NCBI GenBank assembly: GCA_013115145.1
Contig: JAAPAO010000059.1
Coordinates: forward strand, 34,741 to 98,740
Direction of reading: 5' to 3'
Source of the DNA: Perkinsus chesapeaki ATCC PRA-425
Lineage: Eukaryota > Protista > Perkinsozoa
Length of the DNA stretch: 64,000 nt
Within the stretch, counting starts at the first letter, position 1. The number at the start of each line of letters is the position of its first letter. Below are positions 16,260 to 52,129 of the stretch, in pieces. A program made the translations under genes and the position numbers. The notes below the pieces were generated by a model. It did no database searches and was not told the DNA's origin. It was given only the letters and a program-made list of their open reading frames with translations.

Positions 16260-17697
16260 TTTGAGAATAAAGTATTAATATAGAATAACTACCAACAACA
16301 CGTAGGGACACGAAAGGAAAATATGCCACATAAATGATTTTCTCAAGAAAGCAGGAGCCATCAACCCAAACTCTTGAGAAGGGCCATGGTTAAAAGCTTA
16401 CTAGCCACACAAGCTGTACATTTAGATGCATCGCGGGCCTCATGTATATCACACAAAGCTGTCTCCTAATTGAAATTCACGCTACAACAACGTTCCATTA
16501 TGCGGTTCAAAGGCAAGGCCGCTCGTGTTAGATGCAGAGTAACCGGTTATGAAAAAACTAAAATGCTACAACCCGTCATCAGGTGGCAATTAGTTGGCAA
16601 CCAGTGATCATGCCGGACGCCGTTGGACCTTGGACATCAGCTTCAGCAATCAACTGTAGCCTCTCAGTCCAAACTGTGGCATCTCTGATCATGTCGGGGG
16701 GCCGCTTGGCCACTTAGCTGTGCACGCATGCACAACTGCGGTTGCCCGATCTCGACCCTTTCGACGGAGGTTCTTTGGTTCGCCAAGGCACTTCTACATC
16801 TGCCGGTGGTTGTTTTATCTCGTGGTAAATGAGGGAGGCCACTCGTTGTGGGCAGCGCAAGATAACAACGGGTACAAGGGGGTTGATCTTAAGGTTACTT
16901 CAATTGACGCATGCGTGCCCGTGGAGGTTCGCTGCCACATTACGTGGATAGTTCCAATTGTGTTTATTGGAAGCGAGGGTCATCTACATTGTAGACTCTA
17001 CAATGCAAATTCTGCATGAAAGAATCCCCTAGCTGGACCATACTCGCATTCCATTCGCTAGGAGGAAGGGGCCCGGATTCTGTTGCTGTTTGGGTGGACT
17101 GGCCTATCGGACTGGCTTATTCTTCGACCGAATTCCTCTTGGTCTAATTGCAAAGGCGTTTCTGTTATACCGACGCTACTTAACATCTGCAGCAGCAGCG
17201 CACCGTTCAAACGACATGTTTATGCTTTGTGATGATTAGAACATCCCAGCAGAGCTAGAACACCATATTTCTAAATGAGTTTCCGGTTCCCCAATTCTAT
17301 CCAAGATTGGAACCACCGGTTCATGATCCCATATAACTCTAACAGTGTTCAGCATTGTAATGATCAACAGAGACTCAAACACAACTCTCTTGTTGGGTAG
17401 CACACATACCACCTAGAAAGGATGGCTGATATAATGTTCATAAACGAGATACACAGGTGAACGTATCAGGTGTAATAGAGCAGCAACCTGGAATAATAGC
17501 ACAGAAACAGGACGGATACTTCCGTTAGACATGCTAAGAAAGGTCAAGTACAGCCATTCATAGCAAAGGTATTTGGCTATAACATACTTTAGTTTGCAGG
17601 CTGAATAAGATGAAGTGCCTTGCAAACTAAGAGAAATAAACACTGCAATGGCTATACAGCTTATCATCAGCACTCGCTGTATCATCGGTCTACTTAC

Positions 17698-18195
17698 TTA
17701 AGGGTGACCTCTGAAGATCGTGCGAACTGAATCATGCACGGACTTGCCTCCTGCGTGAGCAGCATTACGGACCGAATCTCCGGCAGCTCGAGCGGCGGTT
17801 CTGGTAGCTGTTGCATTGGTATTGGCACTCTGCGAGGCGTTCTCGGCACCAGGCACTGCAGACTCACGGGTGGCTTCAGCACCGCTCACGGCGGACTGAC
17901 GGGCAGCTTCAGCACCGCTCACGGCGGACTGACGGGCAGCTTCAGCACCGCTCACGGCAGATTGACGGGCAGCTTCAGCACCGCTCACGGCAGATTGACG
18001 GGCAGCTTCAGCACCGCTCACGGCAGACTGACGAGTAGCCTCGGCGGACTGACGAGCTGCCGCAGCGCTGTTGGTAGCGGCGGTACTCACCTGCGCGCTC
18101 GCATCAGTAGCAGCTTTTGCGACGTTCGCAGCCGAAGTGGTGACGTCTGTGGCGAGCTTGCCAACACCAGTCGTTAAGTCAGTAAGGAATCCCAT
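17698..18195 (-). CDS. Ala-rich 11-residue-repeat protein, paralog 3
   Basis: MGFLTDLTTGVGKLATDV; five near-identical EAARQSAVSGA units; ends HDSVRTIFRGHP. Confidence 0.8.
   Translation of the reverse strand: MGFLTDLTTGVGKLATDVTTSAANVAKAATDASAQVSTAATNSAAAARQSAEATRQSAVSGAEAARQSAVSGAEAARQSAVSGAEAARQSAVSGAEAARQSAVSGAEATRESAVPGAENASQSANTNATATRTAARAAGDSVRNAAHAGGKSVHDSVRTIFRGHP
17860..18050. repeat. Near-perfect 33-bp tandem repeat (about 5 copies)
   Basis: gcttcagcaccgctcacggc(g/a)ga(c/t)tgacgggca repeated. Confidence 0.9.
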
Positions 18196-19033
18196 ATTAT
18201 TCTAACGGAAATAAATAATATCTAAGAGGTTTCTATCTATGCGAGAACTCTCCCTGCGACTGAATACACCCATTTGAGCTAACAGCCCAGAAGCTTTGTG
18301 TGAAATGTCCCCCTGCGCCCAGCTAGCAGAGAAGTGTGCCGTACTTCACGCGCTACCTTACAGATTCATGGGAACACTTTAGACCGCCCAATGCTTCTCT
18401 GCGGGCGGTGCTTTGGTACGTGCCGCTTCAAGCAGCCGGCTTGTCACAGTTCTCCCTGGAGAAGTCCACCACAGTACCAGCCGGACTATGTACCATCATG
18501 AGTCCCATCCTGAGTATTTTGTGTGTGGGTGCGCGTATCGTGTCACAAAACCGTAAGATACCGTGATAGTACGGGGCGCATTAAATTCTTGTGAAAAGGG
18601 CACTTCACCCTTGAATAGCGAAACTTATTCAATCCATGTGGTCTAGAAGCAGATGAGGTTCATCACGACTGTGACCTCTTGTTGACGAGCACGGCTGTGT
18701 ACTCGATACTCGAGTTGCATTTGGCATGGTAAAACAGGACGTTTCGCGCTTGAAGATTCGAGGTGTAGGTCTTTCAGTGGCCCCTGCTAACATATTTAAA
18801 CAGCAAGATGGCCCGTGAGGGGAAGCTCACCTGAGTTAAGCGTCAGACTTCCACGTGCCAAGGAGGGGACAGACTTTGTGCAACGTTAGCGCAACTCGCC
18901 CGCCCAAGCGTTACACCGCAGACAAGTAACGGACAAGTAGCACCCGAGTACTTTTAACGGCTTGATCTGTTCCGAGCCTGTTTGCTACTTAGCCTTGGCG
19001 CCGAGTCAGAATTCTGTTTCCTTTTTGGTTGTC

Positions 19034-20608
19034 ATGCCTCGTCTTCTAGCGATCTGCGCCATTGCGCTGAGCGTCGTTTCTGGTCTCACTCCAGTAGATC
19101 CCAATTACATGTGTACTACTGCCTGTGAGGCAACTTCAACTTGCGCGAACGATCCACATGCCCACGGCTCTTACTGCAAGTATTGGCTGAGCCCGCCCAC
19201 CTGCTTTGGTTTTTATGTGCGTCCTGACGGCTCTCTATGTTATCAACCTAACGACCCTACATGTGATGACACCTCTCTGACGGCGCTTCCTTGTGGTGAA
19301 GTGCCTCCCGAGACCACCGAGTCCCCAATGGCAGGAGCAGACAGCAATCCGGATGGTGACGAGATTGGAGGTGATGGTACCGAGCCGCCAGTTGGAACTA
19401 CTGTGGGGATCACTGCTGAGCCTCCAGTCGAAACCACTGCTGAGGCTCCAGTCGAAACCACTGCTGAGCCTCCAGTCGAAACTGCTGCTGAGCCTCCAGT
19501 CAGAACCACTGCTGGGCCACCAGTCGAAACCACTGCTGAGCCACCGGTTGAGACTACTGCTGAGCCTTCGGTTGAGACCACTGCTGAGCCCCCGGTTGAG
19601 ACTACTGCTGAGCCACCAGTCGAAACCACTACCGGGCCTCCGGTTGAGACCACTGCTGAGCCTTCGGTTGAGACCACTGCTGAGCCTCCGGTTGAGACTA
19701 CTGGTGAACCTCCTGTTGAGACCACTGGTGAACCTCTTGTTGAGACCACTGGTGAACCTCCTGTTGAGACCACTGGTGAACCTCCTGTTGAGACCACTGG
19801 TGAACCTCCTGTTGAGACCACTGGTGAACCTCCGNNNNNNNNNNNNNNNNNNNNNNNNNNNNNNNNNNNNNNNNNNNNNNNNNNNNNNNNNNNNNNNNNN
19901 NNNNNNNNNNNNNNNNNNNNNNNNNNNNNNNNNNCCACTGGTGAACCTCCTGTTGAGACCACTGGTGAACCTCCTGTTGAGACCACTGGTGAACCTCCTG
20001 TTGAGACTACTCGTGAACCTCCGGTTGAGACCACTGCTAAACCTCCGGTTGAGACTACTGCTGAGCCCTCGGTTGAGACTACTGCTGAGCCTTCGGATGA
20101 GACCACGGCTGCACCACCAGTTGAGACCACGGCTGCACCACCAGTTGAGATCACTGCTGAGTCTCCGGTTGAGACCACTGCTGAGCCGCCGGTTGAGACT
20201 ACTGGTGAACCTCCTGTTGAGACCACTGCTGGGCCACCAGTTGAGACCACTGCTGAGCCCCCGGTTGAGACCACTGGTGAACCTCCTGTTGAGACCACTG
20301 GTGAACCTCCGGTTGAGACTACTGCTGAGCCCTTGGTTGAGACCACTGGTGAACCTCCGGTTGAGACCATTGCTGAACCACCAGTTGAGACCACTGCTGA
20401 GCCCCCGGTTGAGACTACTGGTGAACCTCCTGTTGACCCCACTACTGCTGGGCCACCAGTTGAGACCACTGCTGAGCCTCCGGTTGAGACCACTGCTGAA
20501 CCTCCGCTTGAGACTACTGGTGAACCTCCGGTTGAGACCACTGCTGAACCTCTGGTTGAGGCCACTACTGAGTCACCGGTGGGGAGCATTTCACTTCTTC
20601 GGCGTTGA
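19034..20608 (+). CDS. Secreted Cys-rich domain + mucin-like TTAEPPVE repeat protein, paralog 1
   Basis: Signal MPRLLAICAIALSVVSG; 8-Cys domain including CANDPHAHGSYCKYWLSPPTCFG; 24-bp repeats; spans gap 19835-19934. Confidence 0.8.
   Translation: MPRLLAICAIALSVVSGLTPVDPNYMCTTACEATSTCANDPHAHGSYCKYWLSPPTCFGFYVRPDGSLCYQPNDPTCDDTSLTALPCGEVPPETTESPMAGADSNPDGDEIGGDGTEPPVGTTVGITAEPPVETTAEAPVETTAEPPVETAAEPPVRTTAGPPVETTAEPPVETTAEPSVETTAEPPVETTAEPPVETTTGPPVETTAEPSVETTAEPPVETTGEPPVETTGEPLVETTGEPPVETTGEPPVETTGEPPVETTGEPPXXXXXXXXXXXXXXXXXXXXXXXXXXXXXXXXXXTGEPPVETTGEPPVETTGEPPVETTREPPVETTAKPPVETTAEPSVETTAEPSDETTAAPPVETTAAPPVEITAESPVETTAEPPVETTGEPPVETTAGPPVETTAEPPVETTGEPPVETTGEPPVETTAEPLVETTGEPPVETIAEPPVETTAEPPVETTGEPPVDPTTAGPPVETTAEPPVETTAEPPLETTGEPPVETTAEPLVEATTESPVGSISLLRR
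19410..20580. repeat. 24-bp coding tandem repeat (TT[A/G]EPPVE)
   Basis: gttgagaccactggtgaacctcct-type units; includes N gap 19835-19934. Confidence 0.95.
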
Positions 20609-20897
20609 TAAACCGATACAACACATTTTCGGCTGAGCTCGGCGAGCCGCTGACTTTATTTTTAATTTCTTGAATGATAATCCACTATGTTTCAATTTGA
20701 TCTCAATTGACCACTGTATGGTACAGTGAGAATTACCTCCTGCATGCCTCTCAATTCTTTGTTCTCACTAGTTGATCCAATATGTAGTTTCTAGAAGTTT
20801 ATGGGACGCTGTGTTGGTAATCGGTATGGAAATCGGGTTTGCTCTGGTCTGTCACGTTTGCTCTTGGTTAGTTCATAGAATTCATTTATCTCTTTGC

Positions 20898-22615
20898 ATG
20901 TCACGCGTCGTCTTGAGGTTATTTCATTTCTCGACGCTATTTATTGGCAGCCAAAGCGCTACGTGCTCCGATATGTGTGCCGGTCTCGACAGTTGCATTA
21001 ACGACACGCAAAATCATGGTTCTTACTGCAAGTACTGGCAAAGCCCACCAGTGTGTTTCGGGATCTATATGAAAGCCGATGGTTCTCTCTGCTTTCACCC
21101 TAATGATCCCAGTTGTGACGATACACTGTTTGACCCTGTATACTGCGAGGAGAGCAGTACAACATATGCTCCTATGGCTGGGGCAGATAGTGACGAGCTA
21201 ACCGAGCTACCTGATGAGGGCGATAACGATTACTGGTCGACAGGAACAGCTCCGATGGATGCAAATACGTCTGAGCCTACCAATGAGACATCTGCGGAAG
21301 TTCAGATCTATACTACGACGGAGTCGCCGGTTGGAACTACTCCTGGACCTTCGATTAAGACAACTGCTACTGAGCCTCCTTTTGACACCACGGCTACTGG
21401 TTCTTTGGTCGACACCACGGTTGAACCTCTGGTTGAGACTACTGAACCTCCGGTTGACACTTTTGTTGAGCCCCCAGCTGAGACTACTGCTGAGCCCCCG
21501 GTTGAGACCACTGTTGAACCTCCAGTTGAGACCACTGCTGAGCCCCCGGTTGAGACCACTGCTGAGCCTTCGGTTGAGACTACTGCTACTGAGCCTTCGG
21601 TTGAGACCACTGTTGAACCTCCGGTTGAGACTACTGATCCTCCAGCTGAGACTACTGCCGAGCCTTCGGTTGAAACTACTGTGCCTTCAGCTGAGACTAC
21701 TGTCGAGCCTCCGGTTGAGACTACTGAGCCTCCAGCTGAGACAACTGCCGAGCCTCCGGTTGAAACTACTGCCGAGCCTCCAGCTGAGACTACTGCCGAG
21801 CCTTCGGTTGAAACTACTGTGCCTCCAGCTGAGACTACTGTCGAGCCCCCGGTTGAGACTACTGATCCTCCGGCTGAGACTACTGCCGAGCCTCCGGTTG
21901 AGACTACCGCCGAGCCCCCAGTTGAAACTATTGTGCCTCCAGCTGAGACTACTGCCGAGCCTCCAGTTGAAACTATTGTGCCTCCAGCTGAGACTACTGC
22001 CGAGCCTCCGGTGGAGACCACTGTTGAACCTCCGGTTGAGACTACTGATCCTCCAGCTGAGACTACTGCCGAGTCTTCGGTTGAAACTACTGCCGAGCCT
22101 CCAGCTGAGACTACTGCCGAGTCTTCGGTTGAAACTACTGCCGAGCCTCCAGCTGAGACTACTGCCGAGCCTCCGGTTGAGACTACTGAGCCTCCAGCTG
22201 AGACTACTGCCGAGCCTCCGGTTGAAACTACTGTGCCTCCAGCTGAGACTACTGCCGAGCCTTCNNNNNNNNNNNNNNNNNNNNNNNNNNNNNNNNNNNN
22301 NNNNNNNNNNNNNNNNNNNNNNNNNNNNNNNNNNNNNNNNNNNNNNNNNNNNNNNNNNNNCGGCCTCCAGCTGAGACTACTGCCGAGCCTCCGGTTGAAA
22401 CTACTGTGCCTCCAGCTGAGACTACTGCCGAGCCTTCGGTTGAAACTACTGCTGAGCCTTCCGTCGATACATCAGGTGAACTTTCCATCGAAACTACGGT
22501 TGCTTCTAAGGTTGAAACAACCGAACCCTCTAAATCTACAATTGAGACGTTGCACCCTTCAGTTGATACAATAGTCTTACGTCCAGCTACCTCTACTATG
22601 CGAATTGTTTCCTAA
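20898..22615 (+). CDS. Secreted Cys-rich domain + mucin-like repeat protein, paralog 2
   Basis: Signal-like MSRVVLRLFHFSTLFIGSQS; CINDTQNHGSYCKYWQSPPVCFG domain homologous to paralog 1; repeats continue after gap 22265-22360 in the frame ending MRIVS*. Confidence 0.8.
21420..22470. repeat. Mixed 21/24-bp coding tandem repeat (TTAEPPAE/TTEPPVE/TTVPPAE)
   Basis: gagactactgccgagcctcc units; includes N gap 22265-22360. Confidence 0.95.
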
Positions 22616-25516: not shown

Positions 25517-28500
25517 ATGCACCATTATGATGATGCCTATGGGCGATTTACGAACGACTTGGTCAGCACTTGTGGTGTTATTAAGGCCCATTTTTATTGG
25601 ATATTGTTGTTCAGCTCTTTTGTTCCTTCTGGTACCAATATCAGTTATATATGTCACTACCATCACTGGCAGTATCCTATTCCCAGGAGAACTGGGCAGT
25701 CATGCTCGATGATGCCGACAGATACGCTGTCACGGTCATGTTCATGGTATTACTTGGCAACATCGCCAAACTTATCAATTCGCCCTTACTCAGATTACTT
25801 TGGCGATATTTCTATTTATAATAGATGAGTTTCGCGGCACTCGCCCGAAGGCCTCCACAGCATTCATGCCGGTTTTCTATCCAGATGAGAGCATTCCATG
25901 GTAAGGGGCGTCTGATGGGGGGCATCGGGTCTGAGGGGCTGGATGCTCAGGGCCAAGCTCAACGACTACGAGTACTTCTCTGGCCTTTTCGGGCTCGGAA
26001 TTCGGAAGTGGGCCATCTGGAAGTGGGCAACCGGAGCGATACGTCGCCGTCATGCTAAGTCCCACAAGAGTAGTAGCGGCGGGCAGCCAGTACGCTTGGC
26101 TTATTATTGAGACTATGCTTAGAGTCGACTGAGGAAGGGGAGGAGGTATCCTATCGTGACATGGACCTGCCTTGGGTCACGGTCGTTAATGCGTATATCG
26201 GATATTTGGTCCTGTTCTTGAAGGGCATCTTGAGGGAGTGCTTATGGACAGTGACCTTTAATAAGAGGAAGAATGACAGTGAGAACTGGTGCCCGCAGTG
26301 GTGGAAGGAGTTCTATACTCAACACATGTAACATCATCTACGGTGATATTTCCTATTGGCAATGCTTAGGTACAGAAGGATCGAAGACTGTTGGAACAGG
26401 CCAATATGTTCGGCACCTGGGAGCACGATCGATGTAGCCGTTGCGGTCCTTCGTAGCACGAGTCAGCGCATGTGGCAGGTGTTGGTCCGTTCTCGTCCAA
26501 ATGACATCCTCAAAAGGTTTGGGAAATTCCAGCCCACTGGTGAAGTTCAGAGAGGCTGCATTAATCTGGCCTCATATAACTACCTGGGCTTCGGTGGTAC
26601 CGACAAATACTGTAATAAAGATTGTTGAGCTTTGGACGTATCTTGAGGTCAACTTAAGGTACTCCGTTGGCCATTAAGGCTCTGGACGAGTACGGCTTGG
26701 CTGTATGTGCCTCAAGGCCGGAGTATGGCGGTAAGTCCGGGCTGATTGGGGTGGGCTTGGTGGAATTGGTTTTGTTAGGAACTAATAGACTGCATAACGA
26801 GTTTGAGTCAAAGGTCGCGGCATTTTTGGGAAAGGAAGATGCCCTAGTTATGGGCATGGGTTTCGCCACTAACAGTAATGATAAGGGGGAGACGTGTGCA
26901 CCGAGATCGCCATTAGGAGTATCTTAGGTTGATCCTAGGTCATCACATTCAGGTACTTTCCTTGGAGCCTTGGCTATGACTGAAGGTGGCTCTACTGCTA
27001 AGAAAGTACTACACTGCCTTTCACGGATGCTGTCGGGCACTCAGCTTTGAGTGGTATTTCAGACTCTTTTCGTTTCGGATCAACTGAACCACAAGTCAAT
27101 CGTTGAGGGCGTTAAACAGAGTAGCGCCAAGGTCATCGGATTTAAGCATAATAATATGCATGACCTTGAGAAAATTTTGGATAGAGAGACCCGTACTATG
27201 TGGTGGCAGCGTAGGTTCGTGGCATTGGCCGGGCAGGTTCGGGCAAATGGGCTAAGATCGTTATTATTGTTGAGGGTATTTATTCGATGGAGGGAGAGTT
27301 CTGCCGCTTGAGAGAGACTGTAAGGAAGAAGCAGCAGCAGCTACTGCTTGAATTTGGTTGTTATAATGCTGGCTGCTGTGGTAATCAGGTCTCCTTGAAA
27401 AACAAGTATAACTGTTACTTATGGCTTGATGAGGCTCACTCCATCGGAGCGGTCGGGCCTACTGGACGTGGTATTACTGAACTTTTTGGCGTTGGTAGGC
27501 GCAGCGAAGCACTGGAGGTCCTCGACGGTTTAATTGGTTTATTAGATACTTCGGAGGTTGATATTATGATGGGCACTTTTACTAAGTCGTTCGGTTCTAA
27601 TGGCGGTTACATTGCCAGCACCAACGAGTGCATTCAGGTGCTGTCTGTTTGGGGAGGTTTATCCGCCTATTCGGGAAGCTAGTCTTTCTCAGCACCTTCG
27701 CCGTTGTTCCTTGGGCTGGCTACATGGTGCTGCGATGCCGCCTATGGTAACAGCTCAGGCAATGGCCGCTCTAGATTTACTGTCTACTGAAAGGGGCAAG
27801 GCTAAGGTAGTGGCAGCTGGCTAGGGGGGGGAGGGAGACAGCTTTTGTGCAACAGTTACGTGCTGTACGAGAAAATGCCAACTACCTCCGTGAGGGTCTA
27901 ATGAAGCTCAATTTACGTGTTATCGGCGATATCGATTCCCCTGTTATCTGCGTTATGCTGGTAATAGCTTGGATGGGTTACCTTCGTCTTTGTTATTATC
28001 ACTGATAGGTTCATCCCGAGAAGATTGCTCGCTTCTCTAGGGAATGCCTGAAGAGGAACATTGCGGCTGTTGTGGTAGGTCCATCATCCTGGCTTGGGCA
28101 GTGGGGAGCTTGCTCTGTGCCAGGTGGGGTACCCGGCAACACCAGTGATTCTGTCTCGAGCCAGATTTTGTGTGAGCGCCAGTCACACTAAGGAGCAGTT
28201 GGATGAGACACTCCGTGTCGTTAAAGAGGTCTCCCATATCGTCGGTAATTAGACCACTGGGACCCGGTCGTGTCGCTCGGTAGTTTCGGTCGCACTCGGG
28301 AAATTTTCTTTTGCAAATCGCCGCGGGGAGTGCGTTGGTTATCAACGCACTCATATCACTCATATCACGATATCACGCATATCGGGCAGTACTATGATGC
28401 TTCCTCGTGACTTCTCCCGTGTAGGAGTGCGAGTGACGTAAAAGGGTATATTGATTAACATGAATTTTACCGTACTTGTATATCGTATACAGATATAGTA

Positions 28501-30157
28501 ATAGAATGGAAATATTTCTGGCAGAAGGGTGCATGGTTACACGGTGTCAGGTATTGAGTACGGTAACAACACCGATGAGAATGCAGCCAAGGCATATAGG
28601 AAGTATCTTGCCGAAGCTCCTATTGCGACTGAGCCCCTAGATGGCCTTGAAGCATACTGGAATCCTGAGCCATTGGTGCCTGCTACACTAGAGGAGGACA
28701 GGGAGAATCTGTCGAGCAAAAGTAGGATACGGGAGAGGTTGGTTGGAGGTCCATGTGGAGCGGTAGGCACTTCTGCTACCAACTCTCCCCGAGATAGCGG
28801 CGCCAGTGAGACCGAGGATGAGCAGCAGGCCAAGGGCTTGCTTGATTTCGCCACCATCGATCCTCTGGCATTGCAGCACAAGCCAGATGAGAGGTTGATG
28901 AAGGTTGCTAGGGACGTCGTAAGGGAGAAGGGTGTGGGTGCATGTGGCCCTCGAGGCTTCTATGGTAGCACTGTTCCCTTGGGTTTGGGACCGGAATGAG
29001 TGGCATCAGGTACGACGGTGGAGCACTTGGATCTCGAAAAGGCTATCACTGAGTTCCTGGGCACCGAGGCTTCGATTGTCTACAGCCATCACACTGTGTC
29101 CGATTCTAGTGTGGTAAGTGGTGGTGGAGGTGTTGCCGTCTCCAGGCGGATGATTGGATCCATCAGATCCAAGCATTCATCACCAAGAATGATTTTGTCA
29201 TCGTCCATAAGGACGCGAATCCACACATGTGCATCGGCCTTAACTTGTCCCGCGCTAAGAACATCACTTGGTGGTCCGGAGACATCGCCGAGCTGGCGCA
29301 TTTGGTGGAGACGCAGAGCAAGGAAGTGAAGCTGGCTGCCCGAGCTGGAAGACTTTGGATACTTATGGATAGCAATTATGGAGTCGACTTGGCTCAGGTG
29401 AGTTGAGGAAATATAAGACTGGATAAGATCGCAAGATTTTCCTTTCAAGGTGGTCGAGATTAAGGAGGAATTCGGTGCTTACCTGTTGCTTGATGACACT
29501 TATGGTATTGGAGCCGTCGGCGAGACTGGTCGAGGCTACTGTGAATATTACGGGGTAAGTATGAGCCGATTGCACTGTGATAGTGTAGAGCTGATTTCTC
29601 AGGTTCCACCCTCCTCGGTAGACCTTCTTATTGGATCACTTGAGCACGCTTTCGGTTCCCAAGGTGGATTCTGCGCCGGCAAGCAGACGAGCATCGACCA
29701 TCAGACGCTTTATGGGAGCGGTTACTGCTTCAGTGCTAGTTCCCCACCAGCATCATGCAAGTTTGCTGCCGAGACCATGAGACACTTGGCTGGCAGTGAC
29801 CGTCTAGGTCGCCTTCAGGCTAACGTTGAGCAGCTCAGGCAATGCTTAGAAGATGCCGGTTTGGATCTTCTTACGGACTCCCAGTCGTTTGCGCAGATCG
29901 CGGAGGTCCCCGATGCCCAGCGTGTTGCCAATGCGCTTCAGTCGAGCGGCTTTGCGGTGCAACCATTACTGATATCACCCCTTGAGAAGGGTGGCTTGGC
30001 CGCGGTGGAGCGCAAGAATACCCTTTTGAGAATCTGCGTACGTGCTGATCACACTGCAGCTCAAATCTCCCAGTTCGGTGCCTGTGTTAAACAGCTGGAG
30101 GCCTCAGCTGTGACATCCTGCGCCAAGGGTGATGAGGGCTGCGCCGCCGCTCTGTAA
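25517..30157 (+). CDS. Single-chain serine palmitoyltransferase A: N-terminal TM + LCB2 half fused in frame to LCB1 half
   Basis: LCB2 motifs [33 protein letters not shown] (PLP Lys codon 27584), [21 protein letters not shown]. Phase-1 intron 28245-28550 joins to LCB1 motifs [43 protein letters not shown] (no PLP Lys). 5' exons uncertain. Confidence 0.85.
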
Positions 30158-31218
30158 ATTATGCCTATTCGCGGCCGTTATCGAATTAGTAGCATTCCAT
30201 ACGCCATAAAGCCGCCGTCGGTTCGATTCTACTACGTTTCCTAAGCGTCCCTGTACTTGGCGGTAACAGTATCAGTCTTCCCTGTATGCGTCGCTAAAAG
30301 CTCGACTGTTGAAGCCTATCTCACGGGGTCACTGATGAAGCAGCAGCTATGGTTCACAAGTAGTGTTTTATATCTACGGACGATAATACTATTCTATTGT
30401 TTTTGCCTTGATAAATAAAAGAGGCCATATGTGTCTTTGTCGTCGTTCTGCCGTTGCCGAGGCTTATGTGTAATATTTGTTACAGCTTAAGTCTCGGTTG
30501 GTATTTGTCTGCTACTGTTGGTGATGAGTTTGTTATATATAGGCGAAGCAGCAGCAGCTCATCTCGATGTGATCTATCGAATGTATGGTATGATTTCTAT
30601 TCCTCACCATTGTAATCCTTGCTAGAATGCCGCAGCCGCAGCAAACGCCATCTGCTGCTGCTGCTGCTGTTGCTTAGAATCTGTACTGATATGGTCATAA
30701 ATGGTAGCTCCTACTGTAGCCCACTATTCTTTAACAGGGAGCAGGAGCATTGTCAAGATTTGCTATTCACCGTCCGTCGGGCGAATCGAGTAACGGATTA
30801 ATAATAATACGGCTTTGGTTGTTGGAGTGTTCAGGGATCGGGCGGCCCAGTTGGTATGGGGACAGTTTTTGTGACGCGGCTTAGAACTTCAACTGCTCAT
30901 AGTCCTGGGTCAATATGGCATTTCAGCCTCCCTTTTCCGAATAGTCACTTGTGTCGTATCGGGATACCTATTTATCCTACCCACTTGAACTCCTCCTCTT
31001 ATCATTGGCTGTCTGTCCATTGATAAAGTTAGTATTGTGCAGCGGTGTCCCCTAGGATGTACTAGCCGTAGATATATGCCTGGAATTGCACGCATTTAGG
31101 GATGTTGGCAGTCCTGAATATATCTTAATCAGTATCGAGTCAGTCTTGCCTTGATTCTATTGTCATCTTTGTGCAGTTCATTTACTTGCCTAACACACAT
31201 ACCCCTTGCTTAAATAGG

Positions 31219-34200
31219 ATGATCGCTGAGGCTACAATGTTGGCTGAATCCGCGTGCAATTCGACGACAGTTGCCGATATCGCTTCCGGCATGGCTCCGC
31301 CTCATGATGGAGCCCTTTCGGATGTCGACACAACCGTCTACACATTCACGGTTGTCTTCATGGTCGGGCTGCTCCTCTCACTTGGTTGTTGTTCACTTTT
31401 CCTTTTCAGATGGCGCTGGCTGTGCTTTTGTTCGTAGCAGATGACAAGCGCGGAACCCGGCCGAAATCTTCCATGGCCTTTTACACTGTATTCTATCCCG
31501 ATGAATCGATTCCTTGGTAGGTTGTCGCAGCGCTACCTCTGATCGTGTATCGCTTGTTCAGGGGGCACTTCGCATTCAATGACTACATTGGCGGCCTCTT
31601 CGGCCTCGGTATCAACAAGGAGACCATTCTTAAGTTCGTCTCCAAATATGTCAGGAAATCTCCTGCAGGCAAGCTGTCCGTTTTGCTGATTTATTTGCTT
31701 CACGCTGGTCTTGGCAGATTCGAGCCCCAAGGCAGCGGGGACCAAGTCGATCGCACCGAGGTTTGAGCATCAGTATCTTACGTGGCCCACAGTGTTACAC
31801 GCCTACTGGCAGTTTGCCGTTCTGTTTTTGAAGGGCATCTCCAAGGAGGCCTTATGGACCATCACATTCAGTAAGAACGAGAACGATACCGAGAACTGGA
31901 ACACCGAGTGGTGGAAGGAGTTCTACACGCAGCATCTGTGAGTTAGTCGCGAAACCTGTGGGATGATGATTGTGACGCCGTGACGCCGCCGTAGGTATCA
32001 CCGTATCGAGGACTGCTTCAACCAGGTCATCAGTTCCGCGCCGGGCAGCACCGTCGACGTAAGTCTTCGACGTAAGTGGTTATGTATCTATGTTCAGGTT
32101 TGCCTGAGAGACCGTCCGCATAATATCTTTAAACGGTATGGCAGATTAGAGCTCACCGGGAAGGTCCGTCGAGGTTGCATCAATCTTGCCTCTTACAACT
32201 ACCTTGGTTTCGGCGGCAGAGATGATTACTGCTCTCCCAAAGTCATCGAGGCTGTCAAGGACTATGGTTTCGCTTCTGGAGTGTCTAGCCGAGCCGAGGC
32301 AGGCGGCACCAATAGCCTCCATGTGAAGCTAGAGTCGATGGTTGCTGACTACCTTGGCAAGGAGGATGCCTTGGTCATGGGCATGGGCTTCGCCACTAAC
32401 AGTAGGAAAGATACTCCTTATCAGCAGCTTCTTGGAAGTGACGTTATCAGGTATGCTTTTGGCAGCAGTTGCGCTCACCTCCCCTCAGTACGCCAACAAG
32501 CCGGTAAGCAGCTTTTGTGGAGTTTTGGACATTTAAAGGTTGTCACAGACGCTATTCGTCTCGGACTCCTTGAACCACAAATCTATCGTCGAAGGCGTGA
32601 AACAGAGCACGGCGAAGGTCATCGGCTTCAAGCATAACGATATGCGCGATCTGGAGAATGTCCTTGACAGAGAAACTCGTAGGGAGGGAGGACGCGGGTT
32701 CGATCCCCGGCAGCAGCATCTATTTTAAATAGGCTCTGGCAAGTGGGCTAAAATTATCATCCTCACTGAAGGTGTCTACTCTATGGAAGGCGAGTTCTGT
32801 CGACTCAGAGAGATTGTACGTCACCATCGGTCTTTTTCTTCTTATTGAATTCTACGTCCCTATAGGTTACTCTAAAGCATCGCTACCACTGTTATCTGTG
32901 GCTCGATGAAGCTCACTCTATCGGAGCTGTCGGTCCTACTGGCCGTGGCGTAACAGAGCTTCTCGGTGTTGGTAGGCCGCCCCCCACTTAGGAAGGCTTT
33001 AATGAATAATGGCCGCCTCAGATACCAAGCATGTCGATATGATGATGGGCACATTCACCAAGTCGTTTGGCTCCAACGGTGGCTATGTCGCCGGTGATAA
33101 GACTCTAATAGATGTAAGGCGGCTCGGGAGAATCCAGGTTAAATAATCACAACTAGATCTTCTATTGTTCTATGATAAAAGTACCTCGTAGTAGATAGCT
33201 AGATGAACTTATATGATAGCTTGTAGCTAGCGTATGTGCATCATCAACTCAGTAAATATACCACAAGCTATACCACAGCTATATTATTATTGTACGTTGA
33301 TGACATGGTAAAGCACACAAAAATAATGAATGATGGAAATATTTACTTTTCCGCTTCAGTACCTGCGCGCGACTTCAACTGGATATCTGCATGCTTCGGC
33401 CATGACACCGATGGTAACCTCCCAAATCATTGCGGCCTTTGAGGTCATGAAGACGCCTAGAGGACAGGATAAGGCAAGAAGCCTGTTTTCCACGGTGCAG
33501 TGCTCCCAGTGCTTCGCTCCGCCTTTTTTAGATCCGGGCTATTCGTGAGAATTCCAACTACCTCCGCAGTGAACTGAGGAAGCTGAAGCTTACCGTTATC
33601 GGCGATATCGATTCCCCGGTCATCTGTGTTCTCCTGTGTGTGCCGGAGACGATTCCGGCCTTCTTCCGGGCAGCTCTGGAGCGCAACCTTGCCTGTGTTG
33701 TGGTGAGGCCACGTTGCGCACTATGAAGATTTTATCAGCCTACGTATCTTAGGTTGGATACCCGGCTGTGCCCGTGCTTCTGTCCAGAGTACGTTTCTGC
33801 GTCAGTGCCAGTCACACCAAGGAGCAGATCGATTACACCGTGGCTATGGTGAAGGAGGTTGCGAAGGAGACCGGTACGCTGCCTCCTGTTTGGTGGTCAG
33901 CAGCCTCCACCGTAGGTATCTGCTACGACAACTCCGTGTCGGACGAGGAAGCCGCTTCCTATCGCCACTGGCTGTCTCACGCCCCGCTCGAGACCACGGA
34001 GCTACCGCATCTTTCTGACTATTGGACGCCGGACGATCTGGTGCCCAATTGCAAGTTTGAAGTTCCTCATAACGGTTTGATATTCCCTTCCGAAGATACA
34101 AGTATGTATACTCCTCAACTAGGTTCCTGCAGCATCGCTTGCCGTAGGTACGGTGTCCAGCACACCTGTGGGCGGCTGCGACCGTGATGAGCCTCTACAA

Positions 34201-35751
34201 GAGTTCGCCACATTCGACCCTCTTTCCCTTCTCCATGACCCACCGAAGGCAGTTACTGATCCGGCCTTCTCGGTCATCGAGGAGAGGGGCGTCGGCGCCT
34301 GCGGTCCTAGAGGCTTCTACGGTACCTTGCTCTCACTGTGGGTTCCTGTATATGTCGCGAGTTTTGCAGGCACTACTCTGGAGCATCTTGAGCTTGAGAA
34401 GGTCATCAAGGAATTCTTGGAGACCGAGGCTGCTATTCTATACAGTCACCACGCTCTCACTGCCTCCAGCGCGGTAGGTTATCCTCATCCCGGTGGGCGC
34501 GGCGGGGGATGTGGTTTGTCAGGCCCAAGCCTTTATCAAGAAGAATGACTTTGTTATTATCCACAAGTATGCAACCTACGGCATTCGAACCGGTGTGAAG
34601 CTGTCCCGATGCCGAAACGTGACTTGGTGGTCTGGGGACTTGGACGAACTGTTCGAGCTTGTCGAGGCTAAGATGCGCCAAGTGAAGCTATCCAGCCATG
34701 CTTGCCGAGTCTGGGTCGTTATGGATGCCCAGTTTGGTGTTGATCTCAGAAAGGTAAGCCTCTTGTTGTCCAAAGCTGCACTCGGCGTTTATTACTCCTC
34801 TATGGGGAAATGGCTCAGCTGGAGGAGACATTGCCTGTAAAGACGGGGCAAATCCAACGGTGCAGAGTACTTGAACTTCTGTCATCACATCTGCGTTGTA
34901 TGACTATATTTTTGCTAGTATGCGATCGTGCATGCCGATATAGTATAAATTAGTGAGGCGATAAGTGTGGTACAGTAGTAGGTATGGTCGTACTTGTTCA
35001 CTGTGGTCAAGATTTATTATACCGTTTTTCTCACAAATCGCCATGTGATATATACTTATTAAATGTCCATACCGTCTGTATACGTCTGCTCAGGTCGTTG
35101 ATATCAAGGATGAGTTCGGCGCATACTTGCTTCTCGATGACAGCTATGGTATCGGCACAGTCGGCGCTACAGGCCGTGGCTACTGTGAGCACTACGGGGT
35201 AAGAACATCCTACCACCACTGCCAATAAGGCAGCTGCTTCTCTGTAGGTTCGATGCTCTTCGGTGGATATTCTTGTGGGCTCTCTAGAACAGACCTTCGG
35301 TTCCCAAGGAGGATTCTGTGCCGGCAAACAGACTACCATCGATCACCAGACGCTTTATGCCAGCGGTTACTGCTTCAGTGCTAGTTCCCCGCCAGCATCG
35401 TGCAAGGTTGCTACTGAGGCAATCAAGCGAGTTCAAGGAAGCGAGCGTCTGGCTCGCATCCAAGCCAACACTCGACGCCTCCGACGTGACCTGGAGGAGA
35501 GTGGCGCGGACATGCTTACCGATGGTCAATCGTTCACGCAGGTCGTCAGAGTGGCTGATGCTCAGAAGGTGGCCTCAGCTATGCAAGAAAGGGGATTTGT
35601 TGTTCAACCATTGCTGAGCTCACCTTTAGAAAATGAAGGCCTAGCAGCCGAGAAGAACACATTGCTCAGGATAGCCGTAGGCGCTCATCACAGCCCTGAG
35701 GCCATCGATCAGTGTGTTAACTGCCTTAAAGAGGTCTCTGTGGCTTGCTAA
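31219..35751 (+). CDS. Single-chain serine palmitoyltransferase B (tandem paralog, LCB2-LCB1 fusion)
   Basis: Same motifs: [30 protein letters not shown] (Lys codon 33060), [21 protein letters not shown]; 42-nt intron 33874-33915; [34 protein letters not shown]; stop at 35751. Confidence 0.88.
32690..32718 (+). other. tRNA 3'-half-like fragment in SPT-B intron
   Basis: GGACGCGGGTTCGATCCCCGGCAGCAGCA: T-arm plus acceptor-like 3' strand, with TTTT shortly after; no 5' half seen. Confidence 0.5.
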
Positions 35752-48600: not shown

Positions 48601-51600
48601 GAGAACAGCACTAACCCGCCGTCTTTCGATACCCTTGTAGAAGACTACAATAAAAGCGTAGCGGAGGACCCTGAGCTTGAGATGGCCTCCACCGTGACGT
48701 TACGGCTGGCAATGAGGCCTTCGACCCCTTCAGCCTCATCATCACCGGAGCCGAGCACTAGTGGCTTTATTTCCTGGGATGATGGCCCGGCCCCCACGCC
48801 CAGCCACTCGTTCAGCGCCGAGGACACTATTGAGTTATTGCCATGCTACGAATTGGAGACAAAGATCGAGGGACATTTTCGGCAACACAATGAAGTGAGC
48901 CTCTCAGCAGCTCCGCCTGTGTGAGCTCATCCGTGGTGTCTTCAGCTTAGCCGGTCGCTGACGCGGTTTGCGGGATTCTCGGATGTCATAGAGACACATC
49001 TCTTCCGGGCAGCCTCTGCTAAGAAAGCACTCGATCGAGCTCGCCAGGAGGAGGACCTCACCAAGCGTGCTGAAGCCGTGGCCAGGTGAGACACTACTTC
49101 TTTCGAAATTTGCAGCTCACTGTGGTCTAGGGTTTTTGATCTGCTTTCGCGGTGCGGAGAAGGCCTTGCCGAGGTCCAAAGAGAGCTGGACACGTTCGAC
49201 CGATTGTGGAACTCGCTAGAGCCTGGCGAGCAGGTATGCTCTTCTCGGCAACAATGTTTCATTACCACGCTGTAGATTGCGTCGAAGGTGATGCGTGGTC
49301 GAGCTAAGTACCTCTCTGATGTCATCCGAACAAAGGCTGATAAATGCCGTCTGACTGTGGGGGAAATTCACAATGATGCCCTCAGTGTCCTGGACGAGGT
49401 GCAGAACTGCATAGCAGATTCAGCAGCCCTTCAAAGCTGACTTACGTTTCTTAGATATACATAGATGTTGCATTCAGTGTACTAATTAGTGCTTGTAAAT
49501 CAGGTGGAGCTGTGTACTTTGTTTTTTTCATGGGAGAGTGGGGAGGGCCTTCCAATTTCAATATCCCGGATACCGAGTCATCCCTAGCCTTAGAGACCCG
49601 TCGCCCTAGACAGCCCTCCTCCCAGGATAACGTTGGCAGTGTCACTGACCATGAGAAGTTCATTTTGGCGATCAATAACATAGTCGAGGTGCCAGAGGGG
49701 TGGCAGTGTCATGTGTGCGGCACCCTGATCCCCTCATCCGCTTACGAGGCATGGGTGCACACGCATGAGAGTGATCATCGCCGTCGAAGGCCTCCAAAGC
49801 CGAAACGTAAGGCTGCATGGTTCCAGCGGGAATTGAACCTTACGTATGCTGTAGGTCCCGCGGACATTCCAGAATGTTTTGATGTCCGTGATTACTCTGG
49901 GGGGACTCACTGTGAAGTCTGCAGAGTTCGTCTGACGAGCTATGCTTCCCATGAATCTCACCTCCGAGGCCGGCAACATCTATATCGGTTGAGTGAACGC
50001 CGCAACAGAGCCCTGCATCAGAAGTATTCCTAATATTCACCAACGTACCCATTGCTGGGCGACGCCAGCTCTATAAGCTTCAGTGAACTTGTCTTCTCTG
50101 ATCGCTGATCGTCTACTCTTTTCTCTCCCTGAGCATTGGAGCTTGCGCTCACTGTGACGGTTGCTCGCGTCCTGGTGCAGGTTACCGCGCTATGTCCGTC
50201 CCGGGATCGGCTGGATCCTGGGGGCACCGTGGAAGATTTCACATACCGTCTACGTCCTCGACTGCCGTACCTCAGGGCATGGGTGCGTCCAATTCCCGTT
50301 GGGCTTCGGGCCTTGGGGATGCGCTGAGTAACCAGGACAAGTTCAACTTGGCGATCAACTACGTGAACAAGTCGGATGGTGTTTGGTTGTGCACCATATG
50401 TGGAATTGAAATAACTGAAGGTCCATTGGGTGCACTTGACCATATCTTAACCGAGAATCATAGGAAGGCACGGAGTGCTCACCAGCCGCAAAGTGAGGCA
50501 AACCGGCTTACGGCTTGCGGGTTAATGGCGCCTCTCGCCTTGCCCCGCGCATTTCTATTCCCTTGTGTTTAGCGCCCGATGACCTCCCAGAGCACTACTA
50601 CATCCGGATGTAGTAGTGCTAGTAGGAAAGCAAATACCCTCACGACCAAGTATACTACAGAGCTGTCGCGCACTGTCTTTCCCCAAGCCAAGATGACCAA
50701 GTCTGAGGAGATCACGCGCAGACTCAGTAGAGAGACAGACTTGCGAATTTGGCTGACCGTCGTAGCGAGCAGGAGAGAGGCCAAGGAATGTATGCCCATC
50801 TAGCTTGATTCCTGTCCTCAACGGAGTCTGTGAGCTCTCGGAGCCCCCCACACCGGACATAGCAACTTCTCGTAGATGTTCGCGTACCATGTGCTTCGTG
50901 AAACCACTAGCTTCCACTCTCTTCGCGAACTCGCGCCCAGCAGCTTGACCTCGTCTTTTTTTATGACATTGGGAATGGTCATACCCCTCCTCGGGCAGGC
51001 CGCACTTGTTGCAGAGGAACTTGACAGGGGACTGCTCAATAGGACGCCCTTTTTTGGGGCGATTGGAGTGCTTCGCTTGCAAAGTGTTAGACTTCTTTAA
51101 CAACACTATGCTACAGACCTTGCATGGAGCTTCCTCGGAGCAAGCATCGCTGCGAGTATTTACCGAATCGTAGTCGTACTGTAAGGCGTCAACAAAGTAG
51201 CGCTTGCCTTCTCTCCAGGACTCGAACGATGTCGGGTCATCTTCGAAACGTTTCAGCCGGCGCGTACACGCAGGGCAGAGAACCTTTGGAAGAGAAAGGT
51301 TCGCCACTTCGCGAGTAAAATCGACCTTGTAGTACTTAACACACCTCTCGCACATTATTTTACCAGGAGGAGAGACTGGTTTCCCAGTCTGGGTTACCCT
51401 CGTGAAGCAAAGGCGGCACACACGGTAGAGATTCTGGAGGTGGCGCGGCTCAGCAGCACTGGCTATTTCCGGGGGTATTTCAAGGTACTTCATCAGCCAG
51501 TGGACCAGTTATAGAATAAATACTTATATCAAGGGCTATTGTGATGTTTCTAGCTGATGGCAGTTAATACTTGAGGCACCCATCTGAGCTAGCATCGATC

Positions 51601-52129
51601 TGTGGGCGCCGGTTGTTGGATTGACAATGTATCTGGTGCGTTGGATAGTCGTACGCGTTCTCACGTGATTTCGTTGAGTTTTTTCTTTTTATAATTTTTT
51701 ATATGTCTAAGTAGTTACAGCCGGCTTCAAGGCGCTTCCAGTGGCCTCTCTAGACGTGTGTAAAGTAGAGTTTTTAAAAATGTCCCCACCGGGGATCGAA
51801 CTCGTGACCCCCATTTTGCGCGCAAATTTAGCGCGCAAATTGAAGAACCAATATTTTCAAAACCTGATGCCTAGAAACGGAGATACGCATATATTCTGAT
51901 CGAGAATTTCATGGAGACTATCATGATATAGGTTTCTTCTTACCTGCATATAATTCCACCTCAGCCCCGACTCCGGCCACCCGTGATCCGTAGAGATGAT
52001 TACTCTGGAGTCGTTCATTGCCGTTTGTGCCGCAAGAAGCTTGAAAACGTAGATACCTGGTTATCTCATGAGAGGGGTAGAGCACACATCGGCAGTCTCA
52101 CCGCGCTACGACATCTCAACCGGCAATGA
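42620..52129 (+). CDS. Large DEAH/RHA RNA helicase with four C-terminal C2H2 (matrin/JAZ-like) zinc fingers; last exon interrupted by a transposon
   Basis: HGDTGCGKSSRVPQFILE, VVTQPRRLAAITLA, TTGYLLQ, ILDEAHER, VMSATLQ, VFLPGIAEI, STNIAESSVTIPGV, QRMGRAGR, HA2 LGKLCIVMPLELRLCK. Fingers at ~49700, ~49910, ~50390 and ~52015. Confidence 0.88.
50555..51493 (-). pseudogene. 3'-truncated transposase: RAG1/Chapaev-type N-terminal Zn-binding region, no DDE core
   Basis: HLQNLYRVCRLC...VDFTREVANLSLPKVLCPAC...CKVC, KKGRP, CNKC..H..C. The last ~20 codons read out through the palindrome into host sequence. Confidence 0.75.
50591..50620. repeat. Perfect 30-bp palindrome at the insertion junction
   Basis: AGCACTACTACATCC|GGATGTAGTAGTGCT. 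Confidence 0.98.
50607..51985 (-). mobile_element. Truncated DNA transposon (RAG1-like/Transib- or Chapaev-related), one intact CAC end, 5-bp duplication ATCCG
   Basis: End reads CACGGGTGGCC on the minus strand from 51985; ATCCG at 50602-50606 and 51986-51990; removing the insert restores the helicase frame HYYIR-RDDYSG. Confidence 0.85.
51781..51809 (-). other. tRNA 3'-half-like fragment inside the transposon subterminal region
   Basis: GGTCACGAGTTCGATCCCCGGTGGGGACA followed by TTTTT. Confidence 0.45.

What the first reader, a model, noticed from the sequence alone, without database searches (positions are those of the whole stretch)
50555..51990. RAG1-like transposon remnant with CAC terminus and 5-bp target duplication in a protist
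The ORF aligns by eye with the RAG1 N-terminal Zn-binding region: HLQNLYRVCRLC vs RAG1 HQANLRHLCRIC; KYYKVDF..LPKVLCPAC vs KVFRIDV..HPTEFCHNC; CKVC vs CDIC (RAG1 residues recalled from memory). The same domain occurs in Chapaev transposases. The intact end starts CAC (CACGGGTGG) and is flanked by an exact 5-bp ATCCG duplication. CAC ends with 5-bp TSDs characterise Transib/ProtoRAG/RAG transposition, whereas Chapaev TSDs are reported as shorter. RAG-like transposons are known from bivalves, the hosts of Perkinsus, so horizontal transfer is a testable idea. The catalytic core is missing, so family assignment remains open.
Basis: partly seen in the sequence, partly recalled or inferred. Interest (0 to 1): 0.92.

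Follow-up and report, generated by a model that had tools for sequence, protein, structure and literature searches.

The report
Truncated Chapaev-type transposon in Perkinsus
This is a dead, half-deleted copy of a Chapaev-type cut-and-paste transposon inserted in a Perkinsus zinc-finger gene; its family is a distant relative of the RAG1 antibody-gene recombinase but not a RAG/Transib element proper.

Summary
A 1.38-kb insert (50606/7-51985, minus strand) splits a zf-met C2H2 gene. It ends in CACGGGTG and is flanked by a repeated ATCCG. Its 312-aa ORF carries the H-x7-C-x2-C ... C-x2-C ... C-x2-C ligand pattern of the RAG1 N-terminal zinc domain.

Full-length relatives (about 750 aa, 3.1-3.8 kb, one ORF, no RAG2-like gene) occur in P. 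marinus, P. olseni, P. chesapeaki and an unidentified AT-rich eukaryote. They show Chapaev hallmarks: CAC...GTG termini, C(2)C, LH and H(4)H motifs, and an N-terminal Chapa-like domain. TSDs are 4 bp in three clean cases and 5 bp in one.

The predicted core has the RAG1/Transib fold (Z 23), with only weak sequence similarity (E about 6e-4).

The window copy stops at codon about 291, before the DDE residues. A perfect 30-bp palindrome, unique in the window, sits at the truncated junction. Its centre fits a 4-bp TSD (ATCC) followed by 15 P-type nucleotides, which suggests a flank hairpin as in RAG/Transib/hAT cleavage.

Perkinsus copies form their own diversified clade, so recent transfer from bivalves has no support.

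First readers of this scan flagged the same family on other DNA of this genome.

The parts
50192..50605 (+). Upstream part of the host gene, a tandem paralog of the zf-met C2H2 gene at 49512-50033. It ends in the left target-site copy ATCC (50602-50605).
   Evidence: ORF list and Pfam zf-met hits on the paralog and on the downstream half. The reading frame across the reconstructed empty site matches the paralog.
50606..50620 (.). 15-nt exact inverted copy of the adjoining host flank 50591-50605. Together they form a perfect 30-bp palindrome. Read as P-type nucleotides from an opened flank hairpin.
   Evidence: It is the only perfect palindrome with arms of 9 nt or more in the 64-kb window. It lies exactly between the host flank and the point where transposase homology stops.
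50621..51985 (-). Remnant of the Chapaev-like transposon: the 5' terminus, the 5' non-coding region and the first ~291 codons. The 3' part is missing; relative to 3.1-3.8-kb relatives that is roughly 1.7-2.4 kb, including the DDE core and the 3' TIR.
   Evidence: tblastn with P0010 matches residues 6-295 at 51490-50624. Family alignment. Full-length relatives are 3110-3827 bp.
50624..51493 (-). Truncated transposase coding region (residues 1-290). It is 62-64% identical to P. olseni and P. chesapeaki copies.
51113..51442 (-). Chapa/NZD-like zinc domain (H18 to C127). ZFa-like ligands are C26, C29, C73, C76. ZFb-like ligands are H18, C118, C124, C127.
   Evidence: Ligand spacing compared with the published mouse RAG1 NZD. 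zf-AD/ZAD hits for family members. Atlas hits to RAG1_imp_bd clusters for residues 1-200 of P0010. The Foldseek alignment with full-length RAG1 starts at RAG1 residue 87.
51494..51985 (-). 5' terminal non-coding region. The terminus CACGGGTG is at 51978-51985. A conserved B-box-like motif is at about 51780-51812.
   Evidence: Aligns with the P. olseni copy L008, including the terminus. Depth excess and loose ends at 51985. No Rfam match.
51986..51989 (.). Right target-site copy ATCC. G51990 is host sequence that also matches G50606.
51986..52129 (+). Downstream part of the interrupted host gene, carrying the zf-met finger.
   Evidence: Pfam zf-met E 5.6e-5. An RNA contig covers 52052-52296.
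50555..50623 (-). Tail of the ORF with no family homology. It reads through the palindrome and into the host flank until a chance stop codon.
   Evidence: The family alignment diverges after ..GREGICFP.

Best explanation
The insert is a dead, 3'-truncated copy of a single-ORF cut-and-paste DNA transposon of the Chapaev type (CMC / 'CMCT' clade, the lineage that also holds Transib and RAG1). Shown: a full element in Perkinsus is about 3.1 kb with TIRs of roughly 170-210 bp starting CACGGGTG. It encodes one ~750-aa transposase made of an N-terminal two-zinc Chapa/NZD-like domain, a small CCHC knuckle, and a DDE core with the RAG1/Transib fold. In P0010 numbering the core residues are D363, D433, C452/C455, L506-H507, H627/H632 and E653. 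Inferred history of this copy: a complete element inserted into a zf-met gene, duplicating ATCC. Later the transposase cut the 3' end and left the host flank as a covalently closed hairpin, as RAG1, Transib and hAT enzymes do. The hairpin was nicked 15 nt from its tip. That end was then joined to a broken or resected point inside the element at codon ~291, deleting the catalytic half and the 3' TIR. What remains has one end and no transposase, so it cannot move. It keeps an open frame for the zinc domain only and inactivates this paralog of the host gene.
For: Family and full-length relatives. The exhaustive profile search gave 1621 hits at E<=1e-3. The consensus motifs GIDGGGGFLK, DLKLxNIxxG..H.S..PCxWC, PPELHLLLG, KxHxxFxHV and SEQxxES come from the 63-sequence alignment. 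They match the published Chapaev hallmarks of C(2)C, LH, H(4)H, CAC..GTG ends and 3-4-bp TSDs (PMC4079192). TSDs and termini: GCGT (L003), CTCA (L002), ATTA (L005), CAACC (L006). DUF1280 matches 10 of 63 relatives, best E 6e-7. Profile against PDB: zebrafish RAG1 E 5.9e-4 and amphioxus RAG1L 6.1e-4; the RAG1 and RAG1L matches both align the second D and C(2)C, and the RAG1L match also aligns H(4)H. AF2 model pLDDT 80.8. The top 49 Foldseek PDB hits are all RAG1, RAGL or HzTransib. VIA-align gives Z 23.4 to RAG1 460-1007 and 22.8 to HzTransib, against 13.4 for the P element and about 9 for Hermes. N-terminal domain. Palindrome at the junction. In two elements of the sister clade, 2-nt palindromic extras lie between the right terminus and the 4-bp TSD copy (TA before TAAC, AT before ATCC).
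Against: No reference Chapaev, Chapaev3, EnSpm or Transib transposase from Repbase could be placed in a tree here, so 'Chapaev' rests on hallmarks rather than phylogeny. One clean copy (L006, TIRs 99% alike) has a 5-bp TSD, which is outside the 3-4 bp quoted for Chapaev. The hairpin step is inferred from one 15-nt and two 2-nt palindromic junctions. Snap-back synthesis during end joining could give the same pattern, and no biochemistry exists for this family. No empty-site allele was found in the reads.
Confidence: 0.82

Rival explanations
1. It is a genuine Transib/RAG-like (RAGL) transposon remnant, making 5-bp TSDs and directly related to the RAG1 lineage.
For: Literal ATCCG repeat at both junctions. 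One relative has a 5-bp TSD (L006). The core has the RAG1/Transib fold. The N-terminal domain resembles the RAG1 NZD. Kapitonov and Koonin 2015 place Chapaev inside a broad Transib superfamily.
Against: Three clean relatives have 4-bp TSDs. The palindrome centre argues for ATCC in the window. There is no Pfam RAG1 or Transib-type hit, and profile E-values to RAG1 are only about 6e-4. Canonical Transib transposases lack an NZD-like domain. The 3.1-3.8-kb elements have a single ORF, so there is no RAG2-like gene.
Confidence: 0.1
2. The truncated ORF is not mere debris. It is an exapted or regulatory gene: a stand-alone Chapa-domain DNA-binding protein, for example a transposition repressor, kept by selection.
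For: The 290 homologous codons have no stop or frameshift and start at an ATG. The genome's annotation calls a 266-aa product from it (P0001). Truncated copies retaining the N-terminal half recur (P0002, P0004, P0005).
Against: No RNA contig covers it beyond a 32-nt match that fits another copy. Its C-terminal tail is read-through into a palindrome and host DNA. A recently truncated copy would also still be open. No ortholog at the same locus was found in other species.
Confidence: 0.05
3. The palindromic junction was made by ordinary double-strand-break repair (fold-back or template-switch synthesis), unrelated to transposase chemistry. The truncation is then a random deletion.
For: Templated inverted insertions are a known product of alternative end joining (general knowledge). 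Only one long palindrome was seen. Another truncated copy (L010) has no palindrome at its junction.
Against: The deletion ends exactly at the element/target boundary and keeps the target duplication intact, as expected for a transposase cut. The palindrome axis coincides with the end of a 4-bp TSD, the length seen in relatives. Two further elements carry 2-nt palindromic additions at the same kind of boundary.
Confidence: 0.3

Closest known systems
Chapaev / Chapaev3 transposons (CMC superfamily; Kapitonov and Jurka 2007, 2008; Yuan and Wessler 2011)
   Same: CAC...GTG termini, mostly 4-bp TSDs and a single transposase ORF. [quoted passage not shown] The N-terminal zinc domain is of the Chapa type, with a ligand pattern like type I (one N-terminal His plus three C-terminal ligands).
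   Different: The host is an alveolate protist; described Chapaevs are from animals in the papers read here. TIRs are long (about 130-740 bp). One clean 5-bp TSD was seen. The clade sits on a long branch (1.5 substitutions per site) from the other relatives found. There is no RING finger after the zinc domain, but a CCHC knuckle instead.
RAG1 / RAG1L and Transib transposases
   Same: The whole catalytic region (model residues 256-707) superposes on RAG1 460-1007 (Z 23) and on HzTransib (Z 22.8). The order D, D, C(2)C, LH, H(4)H, E is the same. RAG1 shares the N-terminal two-zinc domain. Elements end in CAC. Junction palindromes fit flank hairpins.
   Different: About 13-17% identity, with no Pfam RAG1 hit. 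There is no RAG2-like partner gene. TSDs are mostly 4 bp rather than 5. The terminus is CAC[A/G]GGTG with long TIRs, not a heptamer-spacer-nonamer of about 38 bp. Canonical Transib lacks the zinc domain.
EnSpm/CACTA and Mirage (other CMC lineages; Pfam Transposase_21, DUF1280)
   Same: CAC ends and C(2)C / H(3-4)H motifs. DUF1280 matches 10 of 63 relatives. Transposase_21 clusters appear among Atlas neighbours.
   Different: Those make 2-3-bp TSDs and lack the Chapa domain. The Perkinsus proteins themselves give no Pfam hit to either family.
ZAD (zinc-finger-associated domain, Pfam zf-AD; Pita ZAD 7POK)
   Same: The first zinc module (C-x2-C ... C-x2-C) gives weak zf-AD and ZAD matches: best E 7e-4 among relatives, 0.019 for P0010, and 7po9/7pok at 0.15/1.3. 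This mirrors the ZFa-ZAD similarity reported for the RAG1 NZD.
   Different: ZAD binds one zinc and is a dimerisation domain of arthropod C2H2 proteins. Here a second zinc site and a transposase follow.

Membership tests
Chapaev (CMC) | Termini 5'-CAC ... GTG-3' | tested here: met
   The window terminus is CACGGGTG. Six paired elements begin CAC[A/G]GGTG and end in its complement.
Chapaev (CMC) | 3-4-bp target site duplication | tested here: inconclusive
   4 bp in L002, L003 and L005; 5 bp in L006. L001 and L011 fit 4 bp plus 2 extra nucleotides. The window fits 4 bp by palindrome geometry, or 5 bp read literally.
Chapaev (CMC) | [quoted passage not shown] | tested here: met
   C452/C455, L506-H507 and H627/H632 are nearly invariant in 63 sequences. 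The window copy itself lacks this region.
Chapaev (CMC) | N-terminal Chapa (RAG1 NZD-like) zinc domain | tested here: met
   The ligand pattern matches the published NZD spacing. RAG1_imp_bd clusters are the best named Atlas neighbours of residues 1-200. The Foldseek alignment to RAG1 begins at residue 87. The evidence is at the level of structure and pattern; no significant sequence E-value to the RAG1 N-terminus was obtained.
Chapaev (CMC) | Groups with reference Chapaev transposases in a phylogeny | not testable with these tools
   Repbase references are not available here. Relatives found are unnamed metagenomic or Logan proteins.
Transib / RAG-like transposons | Significant sequence similarity of the core to Transib/RAG1 (Pfam RAG1 families) | tested here: not met
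   No Pfam RAG1 hit for any of 63 members. The family profile reaches RAG1/RAG1L only at E about 6e-4.
Transib / RAG-like transposons | RAG1/Transib fold of the catalytic core | tested here: met
   Z 23.4 over 420 residues to RAG1 and Z 22.8 to HzTransib. The next family, the P element, scores 13.4.
Transib / RAG-like transposons | 5-bp target site duplication | tested here: not met
   Three of four clean cases are 4 bp.
Transib / RAG-like transposons | RAG2-like second ORF (RAGL elements) | tested here: not met
   Elements of 3110-3827 bp hold one ORF of about 750 aa between long TIRs.

The most novel reading that the evidence does not exclude
Perkinsus and its unidentified sister clade may carry a protist lineage that links Chapaev and Transib/RAG. 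It combines a Chapa/NZD zinc domain fused to a RAG1-fold core, 4-5-bp TSDs, and junction footprints typical of flank hairpins: a 15-nt P insertion here and 2-nt 'open-and-shut'-like additions elsewhere. If the lineage is vertically old in alveolates, two things would predate animals: the fusion of the zinc domain with the core, and hairpin-forming cleavage. The intact P. marinus element would then be a ready test system.
Probability: 0.3. Interest if true: 0.7.

Novelty: new member of a known kind. Interest (0 to 1): 0.5.

Why it matters
The RAG1 N-terminal zinc domain has been traced only to RAG1-like proteins and animal Chapaev transposons. A 2026 preprint proposes that it arose from a ZAD-like finger. 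A diversified family with the same domain and a RAG1-fold core in an alveolate parasite widens that picture. It also supplies an apparently intact element (P. marinus PMAR020401: 3110 bp, 758-aa ORF, TIRs about 95-97% alike, 4-bp TSD) on which to test whether Chapaev-type enzymes make flank hairpins. For Perkinsus genomics it identifies a multi-copy DNA transposon family that disrupts genes and is currently annotated only as 'hypothetical protein'.

Tried and rejected
- Pfam on the window ORF and on full-length relatives gave nothing significant.
- phmmer and a shallow 9-sequence profile against PDB found no RAG1 match. Only the 63-sequence profile reached RAG1.
- The first AF2 run on the 9-sequence alignment was unusable (pLDDT 48).
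- No other copy or inverted repeat of the element exists in the window.
- No empty-site allele appeared in five DNA runs.
- The tRNA-like stretch at 51780-51812 is not a tRNA by ARAGORN or Rfam.
- The organism of ENA assemblies ERZ20067936 and ERZ25072730 could not be identified. The neighbouring ARS2-like gene found only itself. The Atlas gave only a metazoan-leaning hint. The loci contain no Rfam genes and no paper cites the accessions.
- Cluster look-ups of 20 distant relatives returned almost no names.
- L001 and L011 do not show a simple adjacent TSD.
- L007, L008, L009, L010 and L012 lack one or both ends, so they gave no TSD.
Full report
**What is in the window**

The minus-strand ORF at 50555-51493 (312 aa) is real. 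It lies inside a 1.38-kb insert that interrupts a plus-strand gene of the zf-met C2H2 type. An intact tandem paralog of that gene lies at 49512-50033.

Joining 50606 to 51991, which removes the insert and one ATCCG, gives a frame reading ..APDDLPEHYYIRRDDYSGVVHCRLC...

The right boundary is independently supported. Contigs of other copies in public DNA runs of the same organism break off at 51985, and the terminal ~130 bp are about 20 times deeper than the flanks. Contigs from two studies cover the left junction without a difference, so the junction is not an assembly artefact. No read-derived contig skips the insert, so no empty allele was seen.

**The family**

The ORF has relatives only in Perkinsus (P. 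olseni, P. chesapeaki, P. marinus) and in ENA assemblies of an unidentified organism.

It aligns with them up to ..LGREGICFP (residue ~291, position ~50624) and then diverges. Full-length proteins are 747-758 aa (P0010, P0011). The window copy therefore lacks everything from the first catalytic aspartate onward.

Elements with both ends were found in fetched loci:

| Locus | Organism | Length (bp) | Terminus | TSD | Note |
|---|---|---|---|---|---|
| L003 | P. marinus | 3110 | CACGGGTGACCG | GCGT | TIRs 213 nt; intact 758-aa ORF |
| L002 | P. marinus | 1924 | CACGGGTGGCAA | CTCA | Deletion derivative |
| L006 | P. olseni | 2640 | CACGGGTGACCG | CAACC | TIRs 99% alike |
| L005 | ENA, unidentified | 3716 | CACAGGTGTAAT | ATTA | |
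| L011 | ENA, unidentified | 3827 | CACGGGTGTAAA | see below | |
| L001 | ENA, unidentified | 5472 | CACAGGTGTAAA | see below | Nested Tc1-like element in one TIR |

All elements carry one ORF. There is no room for a RAG2-like gene.

**Classification**

An exhaustive profile search found 1621 relatives at E<=1e-3. Many are ~670-aa proteins that match from the N-terminal zinc domain to the end.

A 63-sequence alignment shows nearly invariant D363, D433, C452, C455, L506, H507, H627, H632 and E653 in P0010 numbering. That is D, D, C(2)C, LH, H(4)H, E.

According to PMC4079192, Chapaev hallmarks are 3-4-bp TSDs, invariable CAC/GTG termini, and the C(2)C, LH and H(4)H motifs. PMC4411706 defines the 'Chapa' domain as the N-terminal zinc domain shared by RAG1 and Chapaevs. 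PMC12730594 groups EnSpm, Mirage, Chapaev and Transib as 'CMCT', with CA..TG ends and 2-5-bp TSDs.

The Perkinsus family fits Chapaev on every hallmark except one clean 5-bp TSD. DUF1280 matches 10 of 63 relatives. No Pfam RAG1 family matches any member.

I could not place reference Chapaev sequences in a tree, so the assignment rests on hallmarks.

**Relation to RAG1**

The relation is real but remote.

- **Sequence:** the 63-sequence profile finds zebrafish RAG1 (E 5.9e-4), amphioxus RAG1L (6.1e-4) and mouse RAG1 (3e-3). The RAG1 and RAG1L matches align the second aspartate and the C(2)C pair, and the RAG1L match also aligns the H(4)H pair.
- **Foldseek:** with the deeper alignment, AF2 gives a confident model (pLDDT 80.8). 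Its 49 best Foldseek PDB hits are all RAG1, BbRAG1L or HzTransib, with E from 5e-13 to 3e-6. The next hit, the P element, is at 4e-3.
- **VIA-align:** Z is 23.4 over 420 residues to RAG1 460-1007 and 22.8 to HzTransib. This compares with 13.4 for the P element and about 9 for Hermes.
- **Full-length RAG1 models:** the alignment runs from query residue 5 to RAG1 residue 87, the start of the NZD.

**The N-terminal domain**

The 2026 preprint gives the mouse NZD ligands. ZFa uses C110, C113, C175, C178. ZFb uses H102, H206, C210, C213.

The window ORF has H18-x7-C26-x2-C29, C73-x2-C76 and C118-x5-C124-x2-C127. That is one N-terminal His plus three C-terminal ligands, as in type I Chapa domains.

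Further support:

- Family members give weak zf-AD hits: best E 7e-4, and 0.019 for P0010.
- The profile touches the ZAD structures 7po9 and 7pok. This mirrors the reported ZFa-ZAD similarity.
- The best named Atlas neighbours of residues 1-200 are RAG1_imp_bd clusters.

I obtained no significant direct sequence E-value to the RAG1 N-terminus.

**TSD length and the palindrome**

The literal repeat is ATCCG. However, 50591-50620 is a perfect 15+15 palindrome. It is the only one with arms of 9 nt or more in 64 kb, and its axis lies between 50605 and 50606.

If the flank ended at 50605 (TSD ATCC, the 4-bp length seen in three relatives), then 50606-50620 are exactly the P nucleotides expected from a covalently closed flank hairpin nicked 15 nt from its tip. 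The element sequence resumes at 50621. With a 5-bp TSD the first added base should be C, and it is G.

I therefore read the duplication as 4 bp, with the fifth match coincidental. A 5-bp TSD cannot be excluded, because L006 shows the family can make 5 bp.

The deletion runs from inside the ORF exactly to the element/target boundary and leaves the duplication intact. This is what a one-ended transposase cut followed by end joining would give.

Two elements of the sister clade have 2 extra nucleotides between the right terminus and the 4-bp TSD copy. These are TA before TAAC in L001 and AT before ATCC in L011. Both are palindromic with the flank and resemble 'open-and-shut' joints. This is suggestive, not proof. 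Fold-back synthesis during repair is the rival.

**Horizontal transfer**

In a maximum-likelihood tree, the 12 Perkinsus sequences and the 9 ENA sequences separate cleanly (branch support 98/97). Together they form a 100/100 clade on a long stem.

Perkinsus holds at least four subfamilies shared between species. The window copy groups with P. olseni P0002/P0008 and P. chesapeaki P0003. This looks like long residence in the genus.

The ENA organism is AT-rich (31-38% GC over the locus sampled) and could not be identified. Transfer to or from a host is neither supported nor excluded at depth, and nothing suggests a recent event.

**Literature and the scan's own notes**

No paper in the library links Chapaev with Perkinsus. 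Repbase may hold such elements under EnSpm, which I cannot check.

First readers of this scan flagged the same family on several other pieces of this genome, and flagged the palindrome on this window. I verified the palindrome. The other notes I did not test.

**Verdict**

This is a real transposon remnant, correctly recognised as related to RAG1 through its zinc domain. It belongs with Chapaev-type elements rather than with Transib/RAG proper, and its '5-bp TSD' is probably 4 bp plus a P nucleotide.

Noticed in passing
window 50591-50620: Perfect 30-bp palindrome at the truncated junction. It is the only one with arms of 9 nt or more in the window. Its right arm is an inverted copy of the host flank.
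   Followed up: yes
window 51780-51812; L008 about 1400-1440: A tRNA T-arm / B-box-like motif (GGTTCGATCC type) is conserved in the 5' subterminal region of the window copy and its P. olseni relative. It is not a tRNA by ARAGORN or Rfam. Its role is unknown; an internal pol III-like promoter or a transposase binding site are possibilities.
   Followed up: partly
L001 8982-14453 and L011 3228-7054: Two elements of the unidentified AT-rich organism have 2 extra nucleotides (TA, AT) between the right terminus and the 4-bp TSD copy. Each is palindromic with the flank. L001 also carries a Tc1/mariner-like element nested at a TA inside its right TIR.
   Followed up: partly
L003 5428-8537 (P. marinus GG679899): Apparently intact element: 3110 bp, uninterrupted 758-aa ORF (PMAR020401), TIRs of about 200 bp that are 95-97% alike, and a 4-bp TSD (GCGT). 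It is a candidate active copy.
   Followed up: partly
window flank, L009 5313, L011, L008 1225: The flank next to the CAC terminus is ATCC in the window, L009 and L011, and ATCA in L008. This may reflect a target preference. Other copies have unrelated TSDs.
   Followed up: no
window 49512-52129: Tandem paralogs of a small protein with a zf-met finger. The second copy is broken by the insert. Upstream of the insert its two halves are also in different frames, which points to an intron or an older frameshift.
   Followed up: partly
window 13800-22573: Long arrays of 24-, 33- and 45-nt coding-type tandem repeats, with an N gap near 19840-19934.
   Followed up: no
window 26209-35423: Four stretches repeated about 5.6 kb apart at 74-82% identity, consistent with a tandem gene duplication. 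Another note of the scan covers it as paired serine palmitoyltransferase genes.
   Followed up: no
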